DNA of 64,000 nucleotides, taken from sequence record NC_061421.1; one strand, written 5' to 3'. Position numbers and translations under genes: made by a program. Position 1 is the first letter of the stretch, and each line of letters begins with the position of its first letter. The notes beneath the pieces were generated by a model. It saw nothing but the letters and a program-made list of their open reading frames with translations, did no database searches and was not told where the DNA came from. Below, in pieces: positions 4,556-16,709 of the stretch.

Positions 4556-5109
4556 TTCGTGAACACCCAATAAACACTGTAGAAGTTGATCGCATGAATA
4601 CCGGAAGAGAGGGTATCAAGTTCCCCTAGGTCATCAGGGTCAATAAGGTTGACCTTTAACCCTGTCGCCAACAAACGTTTCAGATTGTAAGCCACGGCTG
4701 TCTGAGGAATCCGAAACGTAATCGCTTGTTGGTTTCTGAAGTGACTAACCAAATCGCGAGGGGCATCACCTAAACGTTCTAGATACTTAGCGAACGTTTC
4801 GCCATCTAACCCGTCTAACGACCACTGCCAAACGACACCGTCTGCCGCAACGACAGCCACTCCTTTATAACGATACGGTTTTTGGTATTCTCCCCATTTG
4901 ATACTCTCTGGCTGATAGCAAGAATTGTAATCTGTGATCCTCAGTTCTTCGCCAGGTTCTGCTTCATCGACCATTTCAGCAAAAGCGGGAAGGAGAATAG
5001 TCTCACCGGCAGCGTTTTTAGCATGGGCGACAATTTCACCCTCAGTGAGCCCATAAGCATCAGCTGCGTAAACCCCACGTTCAAACTTCAATTTTATCTG
5101 CTGAGTCAT
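4552..5109 (-). CDS. Hypothetical protein (185 aa)
   Basis: Coupled to kptA stop by 4-nt overlap. Confidence 0.7.
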   Translation of the reverse strand: MTQQIKLKFERGVYAADAYGLTEGEIVAHAKNAAGETILLPAFAEMVDEAEPGEELRITDYNSCYQPESIKWGEYQKPYRYKGVAVVAADGVVWQWSLDGLDGETFAKYLERLGDAPRDLVSHFRNQQAITFRIPQTAVAYNLKRLLATGLKVNLIDPDDLGELDTLSSGIHAINFYSVYWVFTK

Positions 5110-5675
5110 TCTTTCTTTTCCTCTATTTTAAAACAGCCAACCGGAACGTGCCTGACTAACCAGACCCCGTTCAACGCTTTGTAGAACACGTAGCCGAGCT
5201 CAATTAATTTCTCGGCATCTACGCTCAGTACCACGAGAGAGCCTTTCTTAGCGTACCGTAAACCCACTAACCGCGCCGTCTCAATGTGATCGGTCAAATG
5301 GACAAACTGACGAGATTGCGGATTGAGTCCGTTCTCAAAAATGCTCTCTAAGTTACCCGATGCGGTACCGTGGTACAAAACCCTAGGAGGGGTCTCTTTG
5401 CTAAAAGACATTTCATTCACTGGGAAAGAATGCCCTTGTACCGCTCTGATTGCCGAAAGGTCTTTGGAAAGACTGAATCGTTTCTTGTCGTCTGTTTCAA
5501 CGACGTACATTAACTCCTCTAAACTGACCTCTTTTTTCTGCTCACTGAAAGCAGCAATAAGATCGTCGAGTTTTACATATCCAAATTCGTCCGGCGTTAA
5601 TTTCAATGCCTGAGGGCGATGACGTAAAACAAAACAGAGCGTTTTAGACAGTTTAATGGGGTCATTCATTAGCAT
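5106..5675 (-). CDS. kptA: RNA 2'-phosphotransferase (Tpt1/KptA family)
   Basis: SK.L..VLRH.P, IRAVQGHS, LYHGT and SRQFVHL motifs. Confidence 0.93.
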   Translation of the reverse strand: MLMNDPIKLSKTLCFVLRHRPQALKLTPDEFGYVKLDDLIAAFSEQKKEVSLEELMYVVETDDKKRFSLSKDLSAIRAVQGHSFPVNEMSFSKETPPRVLYHGTASGNLESIFENGLNPQSRQFVHLTDHIETARLVGLRYAKKGSLVVLSVDAEKLIELGYVFYKALNGVWLVRHVPVGCFKIEEKKE

Positions 5676-13000: not shown

Positions 13001-13028
13001 AAAAGGAGAGGCGAAAGCCTCTCCTTTT
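13001..13028. terminator. Intrinsic terminator hairpin
   Basis: AAAAGGAGAGGC-gaaa-GCCTCTCCTTTT. Confidence 0.85.
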
Positions 13029-13571: not shown

Positions 13572-14021
13572 TTAATTAGCAGGCGGCGGGTTGTTTTTCA
13601 GCCGATTTGCTTCCATTACCGGTAAATTAGCCTCAGTTGGGACGTAGATAACCTGATTCTTGGTTTGCTGTAAACTGTCTACCCAAAGGTAACGTAGATA
13701 CGCTTCGTTATTCTTCAGGCTGTCACCGATGATCTTGTTGGCCCGTGCTACGCCGCCAGCACGAATGACTTCTGCTTCGGCTAAGCTTTTAGCTGACTCT
13801 TTCTTAGCCTCCGCCTCCTGCACAGCTATTTGACGGTCTTGAGTGGCCTTCATCAGCGCGGCCTTACCTGCCATACCCTGCTGCCATACGTTGTAATACG
13901 GGCAGCCTGCCATGAGTAGTACAATAAAAGCCACAACTCCGATTGCTACCCATTTACCTACTTTCTTCAACAATGCTTTCAGTGTCTCATTGTCGGTGTC
14001 GGTGTTATTGTAATAGCGCAT
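13572..14021 (-). CDS. SPFH/prohibitin-like single-pass membrane protein (short form)
   Basis: TM helix, coiled-coil AEAEVIRAGG, and YLRYLW..VIYVPTEANLP motif. Confidence 0.7.
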   Translation of the reverse strand: MRYYNNTDTDNETLKALLKKVGKWVAIGVVAFIVLLMAGCPYYNVWQQGMAGKAALMKATQDRQIAVQEAEAKKESAKSLAEAEVIRAGGVARANKIIGDSLKNNEAYLRYLWVDSLQQTKNQVIYVPTEANLPVMEANRLKNNPPPAN

Positions 14022-14272
14022 TATTTTTCCTGTTTAGTTAAGGTTAGTGGTTCACGCGCCATAACTTCATTGACGGTTACTCTTAGACCGGACTGCGCAA
14101 GGATTGCAACCACCTCTTCGGCGCGTTCCGTGGATACGTCAGGTTCGCCGGCTATTTGATTGAGCGTTGTCTCAATGCAGTATTTATTCAGTAATTCTGA
14201 AATAAGTTTACCGATGGAGCTTTTACCCGTTCGTGCCGGGCCGATTATATTGATCGTAATTTCGTTTTTCAT
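14021..14272 (-). CDS. Small P-loop-containing protein (83 aa)
   Basis: IIGPARTGKS Walker A; too short for a complete kinase. Confidence 0.6.
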   Translation of the reverse strand: MKNEITINIIGPARTGKSSIGKLISELLNKYCIETTLNQIAGEPDVSTERAEEVVAILAQSGLRVTVNEVMAREPLTLTKQEK

Positions 14273-14299
14273 TTTGTTTTCCTGTTAGGTTAAACTAAA

Positions 14300-14989
14300 T
14301 CATTTATTGGTTTTGGTGATATACCATTTCCAAAGACCGTAGAACGCGTTCATCAAGAACACCGCCCATTGCGCAACCTGCGCCCATGAACCCGGTTGAT
14401 TAAGCGCCGGGATCACCCACAGATAAATCGTGACGCAGTTGATAATGATCCAGAGAATCCATTGCTCTGGCTGCTGCTTGATCATCATCCACATGGCGAT
14501 GAGCGATGCGACTAAGCAGAATGCGTCTAAGGCAGGAAACGGATCCTGCGTCGTTTTCAGGTATTCGGTCAGGCCATACCAGAAGATAACCCCAACAACC
14601 AGATATGTTATCACGTCACGTAAAGTGATCGTTTTAACCGCTACGTCAGCTTTGGCTGGAGTTTTGCCCAGGTCTTTCGTCCAGTAATAAATACCGATAA
14701 ACTGCATGGGAAGGTAAATAGCGTTCAACGCCGCATTCGCGTAGAGTCCGGTATTGTACGAAACAATACCGTAGGTAATTACACCAACGGTTCCCCAGTA
14801 GTAATTGGAGACACGACCTTTCGCTACCAGAATAACGCAGATCACGTTAGTCAGCGCCGCCGTAAATTCAAGTGGGCTGGCGCTCCAGCTACCAGCGCCC
14901 ACTAAGATCAACGCAATGATCAGCCAAAGGTATTCGACTTTCTTCCAGTGCGCAAAGTCAGTGAACGTTTTCAATACAAGTGTATTCAT
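14300..14989 (-). CDS. pnuC: Nicotinamide riboside transporter PnuC
   Basis: About 7 TM segments; V.LVAKG..SNY.WG, YLPMQFIGIYYW, PALDAF...S.IAM, EQWILWI..N motifs. Confidence 0.93.
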   Translation of the reverse strand: MNTLVLKTFTDFAHWKKVEYLWLIIALILVGAGSWSASPLEFTAALTNVICVILVAKGRVSNYYWGTVGVITYGIVSYNTGLYANAALNAIYLPMQFIGIYYWTKDLGKTPAKADVAVKTITLRDVITYLVVGVIFWYGLTEYLKTTQDPFPALDAFCLVASLIAMWMMIKQQPEQWILWIIINCVTIYLWVIPALNQPGSWAQVAQWAVFLMNAFYGLWKWYITKTNK

Positions 14990-15138
14990 TTTGTGCTCGC
15001 TCGTTGATAGTTGAGAAAAATGGAAATATAACCTGCGCTATGAATATTGAGGTTATCGCCGAACATAGCGCGATAAAGGGGATAACTGTCTCCCAGTATC
15101 CTCTTTATTTTACGTTGCGTACGACGTTGATGGGTCAT
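14986..15138 (-). CDS. Small basic protein (50 aa) between nadR and pnuC
   Basis: GAGGAG RBS before MTHQRR; stop overlaps pnuC ATG (ATGA). Confidence 0.6.
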   Translation of the reverse strand: MTHQRRTQRKIKRILGDSYPLYRAMFGDNLNIHSAGYISIFLNYQRASTK

Positions 15139-15151
15139 GTATCTATTCTCC

Positions 15152-16366
15152 TCAATCAGAAGACTTATGGTGACAGCGATCTTCGACACTATCTACCATC
15201 GCCTGAATCAAAGTAGTAATCGATCCGTCAGAAGGCGCGGTTTGGAACTTACCGGGCTCATCTTTCCGTACTGCGTCCCACCCCAGGAACCCTTCGTTAA
15301 ATGCCAGTAATTGATCTACGGCCGCACGGGCTTGATCTAAACGGCCTTTGTACGAGTCGCCAGTAATAAATACCGTACGCCCCCGAGGAGTTTGGTTTTT
15401 AAACTCCAGGAGCATTTGTTGGAATAACCCGTCAGTTTTCTCTCGATCCGGATTTAAACGCAAGCCGTCATCGACCCACGGGACTTCAGGAGACAGTATC
15501 AGAACGAGGTCGTAGTGTTCTTCGGCTGCGATGGCGGAGACGATAGGGTTAGGTTTACCTTCGTACAGACGATGGTAATACTCCGTGACGAAAGCGTTAG
15601 TATCGACGAAACAAAGTCGATTAGAGGTTCGTAACGCTTCCTCCTCCAACTCTTTGTGACGATACGCAATCAACGGGTAGTCAGAACTACGCAGTGTTAA
15701 CTCAGAGCCCGCTAAGACGGTTTCACAGTACGTACGGCCGTACTCTTCTACCCAGCTGGTGTTGTAGAGTTTAGCGAGGTTCTTGACGAGATTTGATTTA
15801 CCCGCGCTCTCGACACCCATGACGACAACCCGCAGACAATAGTCCTTACGGACAATACTGGGGAGATATTCCCAGTTGGCGTAAAGGTTATCACGTACTT
15901 TAGTGGCCGAGATAGGAACACGAGTACGTTCACTGTCAACGATGACGTGCTCAACAAAACCGAGGTGAGTTTTGTATTTCTCATCGTAATCCAGTTCGCT
16001 ACTGAAGATTGCGATAGATTGAGCTTGGCTGTGTTTAGCAGCCAGTTTCCCGGCCTCGCTGAAAATCTTTGCCCCTAATAAAGCGGCGTATTCCTGCCAG
16101 CCGTTAGGATATTCCGGCACCGAAGCTTCGTCGATGAAATCGATCGTAACGTGTTCGGTATCGGCGTAGGTTTGTTGCAACCAGCGCAGACGGTTTTTGA
16201 AGTTCAACACCTGCTGATCGCGGGGAGATTGTTTGTCCAACCAACGTTGGTCGTGAGATAATACCACGAGGACGTGTTTCGATTGGACAGCAGCTTCTGT
16301 AATTAGGTTGATGTGCCCCAAAGTCAGGGGTGCAAACTTACCGATGACGACGCCTAAATCAAACAT
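15152..16366 (-). CDS. nadR: NadR-type NMN adenylyltransferase / ribosylnicotinamide kinase without HTH
   Basis: GKFAPLTLGH (HIGH-like), ISATKVR, Walker A GVESAGKS, EYGR, FVDTNA, PWVDDGLR. Confidence 0.93.
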   Translation of the reverse strand: MFDLGVVIGKFAPLTLGHINLITEAAVQSKHVLVVLSHDQRWLDKQSPRDQQVLNFKNRLRWLQQTYADTEHVTIDFIDEASVPEYPNGWQEYAALLGAKIFSEAGKLAAKHSQAQSIAIFSSELDYDEKYKTHLGFVEHVIVDSERTRVPISATKVRDNLYANWEYLPSIVRKDYCLRVVVMGVESAGKSNLVKNLAKLYNTSWVEEYGRTYCETVLAGSELTLRSSDYPLIAYRHKELEEEALRTSNRLCFVDTNAFVTEYYHRLYEGKPNPIVSAIAAEEHYDLVLILSPEVPWVDDGLRLNPDREKTDGLFQQMLLEFKNQTPRGRTVFITGDSYKGRLDQARAAVDQLLAFNEGFLGWDAVRKDEPGKFQTAPSDGSITTLIQAMVDSVEDRCHHKSSD

Positions 16367-16385
16367 TGACTTTCACCTCTTAAAC

Positions 16386-16697
16386 TCAAGCGAAATGATG
16401 ATACAAACGATGTAAGTGGTAACCTTTGTAGTTCATCGCGGTGAAGCCTTGTTCGTTCTTTACCACGACTTTGGCTGCGTAATCCTCCATCAAAAGGAAA
16501 TCGCGCCCTGACTTAGAAAGAATATCTCCATCATAAACCGGACCATCAACAATCAACTGATTCATGGTGCCGATGACATGCCCGACATCTTTGCGTTCGA
16601 GTAACATCGTCACGGTTTTCTCTAACTCGGCCGCGTACGCCAGATCGCTTTCTTCTTCGTTATCAAGATTGCAGATTTCGATAATGGTGTTCAACAT
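16386..16697 (-). CDS. Hypothetical protein (103 aa)
   Basis: GAGG RBS; GPVYDGDILSK motif. Confidence 0.7.
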   Translation of the reverse strand: MLNTIIEICNLDNEEESDLAYAAELEKTVTMLLERKDVGHVIGTMNQLIVDGPVYDGDILSKSGRDFLLMEDYAAKVVVKNEQGFTAMNYKGYHLHRLYHHFA

Positions 16698-16709
16698 TTT
16701 CTTTTCCTC

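What the first reader, a model, noticed from the sequence alone, without database searches (positions are those of the whole stretch)
14300..16366. HTH-less NadR, coupled micropeptide and PnuC: an import-based NAD+ rebuilding route distinct from NARP1/NARP2
Seen: NadR starts directly at the nucleotidyltransferase domain (GKFAPLTLGH) with no repressor HTH and has an intact kinase domain; a 50-aa basic ORF with a strong RBS is coupled to pnuC by an ATGA overlap. Established: PnuC imports nicotinamide riboside and NadR converts NR to NMN to NAD+; pnuC/nadR were reported in Vibrio phage KVP40; the described anti-defence pathways NARP1 and NARP2 recycle ADP-ribose/nicotinamide with other enzymes. 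Inference: this module could restore NAD+ from external NR, escaping host NadR feedback control, with the micropeptide as an uncharacterised third component.
Basis: partly seen in the sequence, partly recalled or inferred. Interest (0 to 1): 0.75.

Follow-up and report, generated by a model that had tools for sequence, protein, structure and literature searches.

The report
Phage NARP3 operon with passenger micropeptide
This is the nicotinamide-riboside import and NAD+ rebuilding operon (HTH-less NadR plus PnuC) of Klebsiella jumbo phage FBKp24, a pathway published in 2026 as NARP3. The 50-residue gene between the two is real but looks like a lineage-specific passenger, not a third part of the pathway.

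Summary
The window is Klebsiella jumbo phage vB_KpM_FBKp24. On the minus strand lie an HTH-less NadR (15152-16366), a 50-aa basic ORF (14986-15138) with a GAGGAG ribosome-binding site, and pnuC (14300-14989) joined to it by an ATGA overlap.

HTH-less NadR plus PnuC was hypothesised in 2024 and shown experimentally in 2026 as NARP3 (Bas30_86/87). FBKp24 NadR matches the Bas30_86 crystal structure at E 3.6e-141, and every mutagenised catalytic residue is kept.

The micropeptide is a true coding gene (dN/dS 0.15-0.2; start and ATGA overlap conserved in three lineages). It is an ORFan confined to this phage clade. It is absent from validated NARP3 operons. In sister phages an unrelated 157-aa ORF takes its place while PnuC stays nearly identical. 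The nadR-pnuC junction therefore looks like a recombination slot for variable cargo.

A Nampt-family gene does exist elsewhere in the genome. It sits beside a PRPS-like gene and scores as Namat, so the phage carries NARP1 as well as NARP3, not NARP2.

Verdict: a new member of a known kind, of low to moderate interest.

The parts
15152..16366 (-). nadR-like gene (404 aa, FBKp24 gp278): bifunctional NMN adenylyltransferase / ribosylnicotinamide kinase without the HTH domain
   Evidence: ORF. Pfam domains. NCBIfam TIGR01526 and NF005988 matched from profile position 65 of 411. PDB 9x6f/9x6h (Bas30_86) E 3.6e-141. All Bas30_86 residues tested by mutagenesis are conserved. AF2 model pLDDT 88.9.
15890..16348 (-). 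NMNAT (nucleotidyltransferase) domain, residues 7-159
   Evidence: Pfam PF01467. K10, F11, S37, E80, P84, G89, F121, S123, D126, V150 and I152 correspond to Bas30_86 site-2 residues.
15395..15832 (-). Ribosylnicotinamide kinase (P-loop) domain, residues 179-324, Walker A GVESAGKS
   Evidence: Pfam PF13521 E 3.4e-30. E241 and D286 correspond to Bas30_86 E230 and D275.
15155..15292 (-). Clade-specific C-terminal tail of NadR (residues 359-404), acidic, predicted disordered. One recombination breakpoint of the variable slot lies in or just before it
   Evidence: Absent from T5-like and GAP32 NadR. pLDDT 38-51. Homology to Centimanus resumes at 15327 and to LPKP23/MJ359 at 15249.
15148..15153 (-). 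GAGGAG Shine-Dalgarno of the 50-aa ORF, overlapping the nadR TGA stop (15152-15154), 9 nt before the ATG
   Evidence: Read from the sequence. A purine-rich equivalent is present in the Logan and KpLz lineages.
14986..15138 (-). 50-aa basic ORF (FBKp24 gp277), predicted two-helix hairpin, ORFan of this phage clade
   Evidence: dN/dS 0.15-0.21. Codon-position differences 9/6/18. Homologues only in 10 related phage records and Logan contigs. AF2 pLDDT 87.5 with helices 3-29 and 32-48. No Pfam, PHROG, NCBIfam, PDB or Foldseek relative.
14986..14989 (-). ATGA overlap: stop of the 50-aa ORF and start of pnuC
   Evidence: Conserved in the KpLz/KpZh/KpXa phages and in Logan contigs L011, L012 and L026.
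14300..14989 (-). pnuC (229 aa, gp276): nicotinamide riboside transporter
   Evidence: Pfam PF04973 E 2.5e-43. TIGR01528 above its cut-off. PDB 4qtn E 3.2e-29. The equivalents of Bas30_87 N45/Q94/N180 are conserved as N48/Q96/N184.
13001..13028 (-). First strong intrinsic-terminator-like hairpin downstream of the operon (12-bp stem plus T run). It lies after three further genes
   Evidence: Annotated as a terminator in the GenBank record.

Best explanation
The locus is the NARP3-type NAD+ reconstitution operon of Klebsiella jumbo phage vB_KpM_FBKp24.

Pathway. PnuC takes up nicotinamide riboside. The HTH-less NadR phosphorylates it to NMN in its kinase domain and adenylylates NMN to NAD+ in its NMNAT domain. 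This refills the NAD+ pool that NADase-type defences (SIR2, TIR and similar) empty. These steps are inferred by close homology to the experimentally characterised Bas30_86/87 pair; nothing was assayed here.

The 50-aa gene. It is a genuine protein-coding gene, translated in series (nadR stop, then its Shine-Dalgarno and ATG, then ATGA, then pnuC). It encodes a very basic two-helix hairpin. It occupies a recombination-prone slot at the nadR-pnuC junction. In other phages that slot is empty or holds unrelated cargo. The peptide is therefore most likely a lineage-specific accessory passenger that is co-expressed with the module, and not a required third subunit. In FBKp24, where pnuC has only a weak Shine-Dalgarno of its own, its translation probably also delivers ribosomes to pnuC.

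The rest of the genome. The same phage also carries a NARP1-like pair (PRPS-like Adps plus Namat) about 50 kb away. It appears able to rebuild NAD+ both from the cleavage products and from imported riboside.
For: Identity of the window: 100% match to MW394391.1/NC_061421.1.

NadR:
- PDB 9x6f/9x6h (Bas30_86) at E 3.6e-141; the paper confirms these entries.
- About 60% identity to T5-like NadR.
- 15 of the 17 Bas30_86 site residues named in the paper are identical, including all the mutagenised ones.
- HTH absent.

PnuC: family models and 4qtn match, and the three NR-contact residues are kept.

NARP3 function of the homologous pair is shown in PMC13464706.

The micropeptide is coding:
- dN/dS 0.15-0.21 at dS 0.55-1.6, with third-position excess and a Ser AGC-to-TCC switch.
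- Conserved start and ATGA overlap.

The micropeptide is non-core:
- nadR abuts pnuC in Sw2 (T5-like), GAP32, ICP1, pEa_SNUABM_44 and L027.
- It is replaced by an unrelated 156/157-aa ORF in Centimanus, LPKP23, MJ359, L023 and L024.
- Other unrelated cargo sits there in phi1_175008 and L028.
- PnuC of KpLz-2_45 (with the micropeptide) and of LPKP23 (without it) differ by one non-synonymous change.
- Homology breakpoints lie exactly at the pnuC start and inside the NadR tail.
- dS differs several-fold between nadR and pnuC for the same phage pairs.

Weak pnuC Shine-Dalgarno in FBKp24.

NARP1-like pair.
Against: - No activity was measured for the FBKp24 proteins. Two predicted NR-site residues differ from Bas30_86 (R167 to L, K168 to R).
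- The clade-specific 46-aa tail and an 11-aa insertion have unknown effects.
- Purifying selection on the micropeptide and its conserved coupling to pnuC are equally what a true accessory subunit would show. With only three independent lineages, absence of co-variation is weak evidence.
- Replacement by another ORF does not exclude that both cargos modulate the module in different ways.
- Expression of the ORF has not been shown.
Confidence: 0.78

Rival explanations
1. The micropeptide is a dedicated third component of the import module. It would be a small cytoplasmic regulator or adaptor that binds PnuC or the acidic NadR tail and tunes riboside uptake or couples it to phosphorylation.
For: - Always found between nadR and pnuC and never elsewhere.
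- Serial translational coupling is conserved.
- dN/dS 0.15-0.21.
- Net charge about +7 against an acidic, clade-specific NadR tail.
- Small proteins that modulate transporters are well known in enterobacteria (general knowledge, not tested here).
Against: - The two-gene NARP3 is sufficient in the published system.
- Sister phages with near-identical PnuC and a tailed NadR lack the peptide.
- Tail type does not track cargo type: the KpLz tail resembles the Centimanus tail, and the FBKp24 tail resembles the LPKP23 tail.
- No structural or sequence relative hints at such a role.
Confidence: 0.13
2. The ORF matters mainly as a translational coupling device. Ribosomes that terminate at the nadR stop re-initiate on it and are handed to pnuC through the ATGA overlap, which sets the NadR:PnuC ratio. 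The peptide itself would have little function.
For: - The nadR stop lies inside the peptide's Shine-Dalgarno, and the ATGA overlap is conserved.
- pnuC has only a weak Shine-Dalgarno in FBKp24 and the Logan lineage.
Against: - Amino-acid-level purifying selection, with 28 of 50 positions invariant, would not be needed for a mere spacer.
- The KpLz lineage has a reasonable Shine-Dalgarno for pnuC yet keeps the peptide.
- In most phages direct nadR-pnuC abutment achieves coupling without any ORF.
Confidence: 0.07
3. The nadR-pnuC spacer is an RNA regulatory element (a leader or riboswitch for pnuC), and the ORF is incidental.
For: - The 216-nt transcript segment folds better than shuffles (z = -3.0; 2 of 200 shuffles fold as well).
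- A small hairpin inside the ORF keeps three pairs through double changes.
Against: - No Rfam family matches, including the NAD+ riboswitches, at E up to 1.
- The consensus fold is weak (-17 kcal/mol) and differs from the single-sequence fold.
- The substitution pattern is that of a coding sequence.
- Only three independent lineages are available.
Confidence: 0.02

Closest known systems
NARP3 (Bas30_86 NadR-like enzyme plus Bas30_87 PnuC-like transporter of Escherichia phage TrudiRoth; Yan et al., Sci Adv 2026, PMC13464706; PDB 9X6H/9X6F)
   Same: - HTH-less NadR with NMNAT and RNK domains, E 3.6e-141 to the crystal structure.
- All mutagenised residues conserved.
- PnuC in the same operon, downstream, with the three NR-contact residues conserved.
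- Enterobacterial phage host.
   Different: - The carrier is a roughly 307-kb chimallin/PhuZ-encoding jumbo myophage, not a T5-like siphophage.
- NadR has an 11-residue insertion (about 103-113) and a 46-residue disordered acidic C-terminal tail.
- A 50-aa ORF is intercalated and translationally coupled between nadR and pnuC.
- A NARP1-like pair sits in the same genome.
Canonical enterobacterial NadR (trifunctional repressor/NMNAT/RNK; PDB 8X7F, 1LW7) with unlinked pnuC
   Same: Same two catalytic domains (E 6.6e-56 and 2.8e-54) and the same chemistry, NR to NMN to NAD+.
   Different: No HTH, so no repressor function. The gene is linked to pnuC in one operon. About 35% identity only.
NARP1 (Adps plus Namat; Osterman et al. 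2024; Namat structure 9W5X/9W5W, PMC12774641)
   Same: The same phage carries an overlapping PRPS-like and Nampt-like pair outside the window. The Nampt-like protein matches Namat at E 3.6e-117 and keeps R306, F392 (as F), Y396 (as F) and R399.
   Different: It is a different locus (record 150591-153208), with different enzymes and substrates (ADPR plus nicotinamide). It is not part of the finding's coordinates.
NARP2 / KVP40 NadV-NatV (Nampt plus NMNAT-Nudix)
   Same: It also ends in NMN adenylylation. Namat keeps some NMN-forming activity in vitro (PMC12774641), which NadR's NMNAT could in principle use.
   Different: No NatV-type NMNAT-Nudix gene is annotated in FBKp24. The only Nampt-family gene is Namat-like and paired with Adps. 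The NadR route starts from imported riboside.

Membership tests
NARP3 | NadR-type bifunctional enzyme with NMNAT and ribosylnicotinamide kinase domains | tested here: met
   Pfam PF01467 and PF13521. NCBIfam TIGR01526 and NF005988. PDB 9x6f E 3.6e-141. AF2 model confident over residues 1-358.
NARP3 | No N-terminal HTH DNA-binding domain | tested here: met
   The ORF starts at the first start codon after a stop, 19 nt after the upstream gene. NF005988 is matched from profile position 65 of 411. No HTH family in Pfam.
NARP3 | Catalytic and ligand residues shown by mutagenesis of Bas30_86 (K10, F11, S37, E80, P84, G89, F110, S112, D115, V139, I141, E230, D275) | tested here: met
   All are identical in FBKp24 NadR at the aligned positions. 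Two further modelled contacts differ (R167 to L, K168 to R).
NARP3 | PnuC-type NR transporter encoded next to nadR in one operon | tested here: met
   PF04973, TIGR01528 and 4qtn match. N48/Q96/N184 correspond to Bas30_87 N45/Q94/N180. Same strand, 165 nt downstream. The one deviation is the 50-aa ORF in between.
NARP3 | NR uptake, NR-to-NAD+ conversion and relief of NAD+-depleting defence | not testable with these tools
   Shown only for Bas30_86/87. Inferred here by homology.
Canonical trifunctional NadR repressor | N-terminal HTH domain that binds NAD-box operators | tested here: not met
   The GenBank product name 'multifunctional transcriptional regulator...' is therefore an over-annotation.
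NARP1 (locus outside the window, L016:591-3208) | PRPS-like Adps gene adjacent to a Nampt-like Namat gene. Namat is closer to characterised Namat than to Nampt and has an aromatic selectivity-clamp helix | tested here: met
   4-nt overlapping pair. 9w5x/9w5w E 3.6e-117 against Nampt at about 1e-45. F392 aligns to F, Y396 to F, and R306 and R399 are kept. The pair is present in all 13 clade records. Adps catalytic Lys185 was not checked, because the Adps structure is not in the PDB copy.
NARP2 | True Nampt plus a separate NMNAT (NatV-type) and no Adps | tested here: not met
   The whole-genome annotation shows no NatV/NadM-type gene. The only Nampt-family gene is paired with a PRPS-like gene. 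This rests on the annotation plus the PDB comparison.
Any known small-protein family (for the 50-aa ORF) | Significant match to a curated family, a solved structure or a predicted viral structure other than itself | tested here: not met
   Pfam at E up to 10, PHROGs and NCBIfam: nothing. PDB profile search best E 0.3. Foldseek against PDB best E 5.9, and against BFVD only its own entry. Searches of 5.8 billion and 1.84 billion proteins return only clade members.

The most novel reading that the evidence does not exclude
The nadR-pnuC junction would be a dedicated slot for interchangeable small modulators of NAD+ salvage or of NAD+-targeting defence. The 50-aa basic hairpin would be one such modulator: a new small protein that binds PnuC or the NadR tail and gates riboside import during infection. 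This would make NARP3 in jumbo phages a three-part, tunable system.
Probability: 0.1. Interest if true: 0.55.

Novelty: new member of a known kind. Interest (0 to 1): 0.25.

Why it matters
The finding shows that the recently described NARP3 counter-defence pathway also exists in nucleus-forming-type Klebsiella jumbo phages. There it sits in the same genome as a NARP1-like pair. The phage may therefore rebuild NAD+ both from the products of NADase cleavage and from imported riboside.

This is useful for annotation. The GenBank name calls the enzyme a transcriptional regulator, which it is not. The micropeptide is not annotated in several relatives.

It also bears on how heavily phages of a clinically relevant host invest in NAD+ supply. 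The micropeptide itself is a small, well-defined ORFan. It is worth a look only if structural or expression data tie it to PnuC or NadR.

Tried and rejected
1. Micropeptide as a detached DNA-binding domain (HTH or ribbon-helix-helix) or an arginine-rich RNA-binding peptide. There is no Pfam hit even at E 10. The AF2 model is an all-helical hairpin without a strand. There is no fold match. The idea is left as untested speculation.

2. NadR-micropeptide fusion by frameshifting. The peptide's frame is closed one codon upstream of its ATG in KpZh_1, and the spacer length varies. Rejected.

3. Micropeptide as a remnant of the 157-aa ORF, or the reverse. There is no similarity by tblastn or blastp. 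Rejected.

4. Riboswitch or leader RNA. No Rfam hit, and the consensus fold is weak. Kept only as a minor rival.

I did not try another route. I used the permitted two-sequence alignment.

6. The Adps comparison could not be completed, because the published Adps structures are not in the PDB copy.

7. No supplement of the NARP3 paper is held as text, so I could not check whether FBKp24 was among its 124 hits.

8. The FBKp24 genome preprint does not mention NAD genes.

9. Pfam and PDB gave nothing for the intein-like insertion in L023.

While thinking about what the micropeptide might resemble, I recalled from memory short fragments of well-known small DNA- and RNA-binding proteins, some of them viral.
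Full report
**Identity of the window.** The region 14000-16700 is 100% identical to Klebsiella phage vB_KpM_FBKp24 (MW394391.1 / NC_061421.1, 307,210 bp, genus Maaswegvirus). Window coordinate equals record coordinate minus 186,000. The three genes of the finding are already annotated there:
- gp278, named 'multifunctional transcriptional regulator/NMN adenylyltransferase/ribosylnicotinamide kinase NadR';
- gp277, a 50-aa hypothetical protein;
- gp276, named 'nicotinamide mononucleotide transporter'.

**Observation.**
- The NadR-like ORF (15152-16366, 404 aa) starts at the first start codon after a stop, 19 nt after the preceding gene. It has a strong ribosome-binding site and opens directly with the nucleotidyltransferase motif.
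- Pfam finds CTP_transf_like (7-159) and AAA_28 (179-324) and no HTH.
- The NCBIfam profile of full-length NadR is matched only from profile position 65 of 411.
- The 50-aa ORF (14986-15138; pI 10.7) has GAGGAG 9 nt before its ATG. That motif overlaps the nadR stop codon.
- Its own stop overlaps the pnuC start as ATGA.
- PnuC (14300-14989, 229 aa) matches PF04973, TIGR01528 and the Neisseria PnuC structure 4QTN.

**The pathway is known.**
- The best solved-structure match of the NadR is 9X6F/9X6H (E 3.6e-141).
- These entries are Bas30_86 of Escherichia phage TrudiRoth, the enzyme of 'NARP3' (Yan et al., Sci Adv, Aug 2026, PMC13464706).
- That paper shows that an HTH-less NadR plus a PnuC-type transporter import nicotinamide riboside, convert it through NMN to NAD+, and restore phage growth on Sir2-HerA and DSR1 hosts. 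The rescue depends on riboside supply, and both genes are required.
- The NARP1/NARP2 paper had already proposed that NadR-PnuC operons form 'yet another pathway'.
- A 2024 survey noted pnuC-nadR clusters in jumbo phages.

**How well FBKp24 fits NARP3.**
- All Bas30_86 residues tested by mutagenesis are identical in FBKp24 NadR. Of the 17 named site residues, only two modelled contacts differ (R167 to L, K168 to R).
- The three PnuC residues said to contact riboside are conserved.
- An AF2 model built on 72 homologues is confident for residues 1-358.
- NadR homologues occur in 723 phage records. The closest outside this clade are T5-like Salmonella and Escherichia phages at about 60% identity.
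- I therefore file the locus as a member of NARP3 by homology. Activity was not and could not be tested here.

**What is particular to this clade.** Eleven related jumbo phages (13 records) share the module. Their NadR has two additions:
- an 11-residue insertion extending a helix around residues 103-113;
- a 46-residue acidic C-terminal tail that T5-like and GAP32 enzymes lack. The tail is predicted with pLDDT 38-51, so it is disordered or dependent on a partner.

**The micropeptide is a real gene.**
- Homologues exist in eight of the related phages. They are unannotated in KpLz-2_45 and in the unannotated 'Serratia phage Kp...' records.
- Homologues also exist in Logan metagenome contigs. 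They are always 47-50 aa, always lie between the NadR tail and pnuC, and always have the ATGA overlap.
- Between the three diverged lineages, differences fall 9/6/18 on codon positions 1/2/3. They include a serine AGC-to-TCC switch.
- Nei-Gojobori dN/dS is 0.15-0.21 at dS 0.55-1.6. For comparison, nadR is at 0.04-0.06 and pnuC at 0.01-0.08.
- Twenty-eight of the 50 positions are invariant, above all the N-terminal basic stretch.
- AF2 predicts two helices, 3-29 and 32-48, at pLDDT 87.5. The independent BFVD model agrees, with TM 0.98.
- No family, solved structure or predicted viral structure resembles it.
- Searches of 5.8 billion and of 1.84 billion proteins return only clade members.

**But it is not a core component.**
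- In T5-like Sw2, GAP32, ICP1, pEa_SNUABM_44 and metagenomic contig L027, nadR abuts or overlaps pnuC with nothing between. The validated NARP3 is this two-gene form.
- Within the FBKp24 clade, Centimanus carries an unrelated 156/157-aa ORF instead. Centimanus is 93-96% identical in the flanks. LPKP23, MJ359 and contigs L023 and L024/L025 carry the same ORF family. MJ359 has a further 133-aa ORF.
- Klebsiella phage phi1_175008 has three other small ORFs there, and contig L028 has a 121-aa ORF.
- None of these cargo families is related to another.
- Homology between FBKp24 and the 157-aa carriers breaks exactly at the pnuC start codon and inside the NadR tail.
- The type of tail does not track the type of cargo.
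- PnuC of a micropeptide carrier (KpLz-2_45) and of a 157-aa carrier (LPKP23) differ by a single non-synonymous change.
- dS between FBKp24 and KpLz-2_45 is 1.70 for nadR but 0.36 for pnuC, so recombination has occurred between the two genes.

The junction thus behaves as a recombination slot for variable accessory genes. The micropeptide is one of its occupants. In FBKp24 and the Logan lineage pnuC has only a weak Shine-Dalgarno sequence, so translation of the peptide probably also feeds ribosomes to pnuC. KpLz, Centimanus and LPKP23 have a good one.

- The whole genome annotation shows one Nampt-family gene, at record 150591-152348, outside the window. It overlaps by 4 nt a 'ribose-phosphate pyrophosphokinase' gene.
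- That protein matches the Namat crystal structures 9W5X/9W5W at E 3.6e-117, against about 1e-45 for true Nampt. The entries are identified in PMC12774641.
- It keeps the catalytic arginines and the aromatic selectivity-clamp positions.
- The pair is therefore NARP1-like, not NARP2.
- All 13 clade records carry both modules. The papers read here do not mention NARP1 and NARP3 together in one phage. I did not survey how common that is.

**Rivals for the micropeptide.**
- A dedicated regulator or adaptor of PnuC or NadR remains possible, at about 0.13.
- A pure coupling spacer is unlikely given the amino-acid constraint.
- An RNA element is very unlikely. There is no Rfam hit. A single-sequence fold z-score of -3.0 and one small hairpin with three compensated pairs are not enough against a clear coding signal.
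- A frameshift fusion with NadR is excluded by the KpZh_1 spacer.

**Verdict.** The pathway interpretation is correct but already published as NARP3. The 'third component' idea is not supported. The locus is a new member of a known kind, with a modestly interesting variable slot and a co-resident NARP1-like pair.

Noticed in passing
L016:591-3208 (NC_061421.1 150591-153208; outside the window): An overlapping PRPS-like and Nampt-like gene pair. The Nampt-like protein scores as Namat (9W5X, E 3.6e-117) and keeps the clamp aromatics, so the phage has a NARP1-like pair as well as NARP3. All 13 records of the clade carry both.
   Followed up: partly
L023:3062-3982 (Logan SRR32022543 contig; protein P0011, 707 aa): In a metagenomic relative the NadR gene carries an in-frame insertion of about 307 aa exactly inside the kinase Walker-A loop. 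It begins with Cys and ends with Asn followed by Cys. It has TxxH-like and LAGLIDADG-like stretches, so it is intein-like. No Pfam or PDB match supports this.
   Followed up: partly
window 14990-15330 and the equivalent junctions in L003-L007, L020, L023-L028: The nadR-pnuC junction is a variable slot. It is empty in five lineages. Elsewhere it holds the 47-50-aa peptide, a 156/157-aa ORF (plus a 133-aa ORF in MJ359), three small ORFs (74, 57 and 98 aa) in phi1_175008, or a 121-aa ORF in L028. The cargo families are unrelated to one another.
   Followed up: yes
window 15155-15292: NadR of this clade has a 46-residue acidic C-terminal tail that T5-like and GAP32 enzymes lack. It is predicted with low confidence and varies between relatives. 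It keeps a short shared motif, and one recombination breakpoint lies within it. Its function is unknown.
   Followed up: partly
window 14300-16366 compared with L004: Mosaic divergence: between FBKp24 and KpLz-2_45, dS is 1.70 for nadR but 0.36 for pnuC. Against Centimanus the order is reversed (0.32 and 0.57). This points to recombination between the two genes.
   Followed up: partly
window 14960-15175 (minus strand): The transcript from the nadR stop to the pnuC start folds better than shuffled controls (z = -3.0). A small hairpin inside the ORF keeps three pairs through double changes in relatives. There are too few lineages to judge.
   Followed up: partly
window 14021-14272: An 83-aa mini P-loop protein (GPARTGKS) lies directly downstream of pnuC. 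It is present in FBKp24 and Centimanus but absent in KpLz-2_45. It has only weak AAA_18 and cytidylate-kinase N-terminal matches.
   Followed up: no
window 5106-5669, and record positions outside the window: Other NAD+/ADP-ribose-related genes in the genome: a Tpt1-type RNA 2'-phosphotransferase (inside the window), RtcB, and two macro-domain proteins. The phage also encodes a chimallin-like shell protein and PhuZ tubulin, so it is probably nucleus-forming.
   Followed up: no
L004:2192-2335, L007:2501-2644, L008:2501-2644: The micropeptide homologue is not annotated in KpLz-2_45. Six related genomes are deposited as unannotated 'UNVERIFIED_ORG Serratia phage' records although their stated host is Klebsiella pneumoniae.
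   Followed up: no
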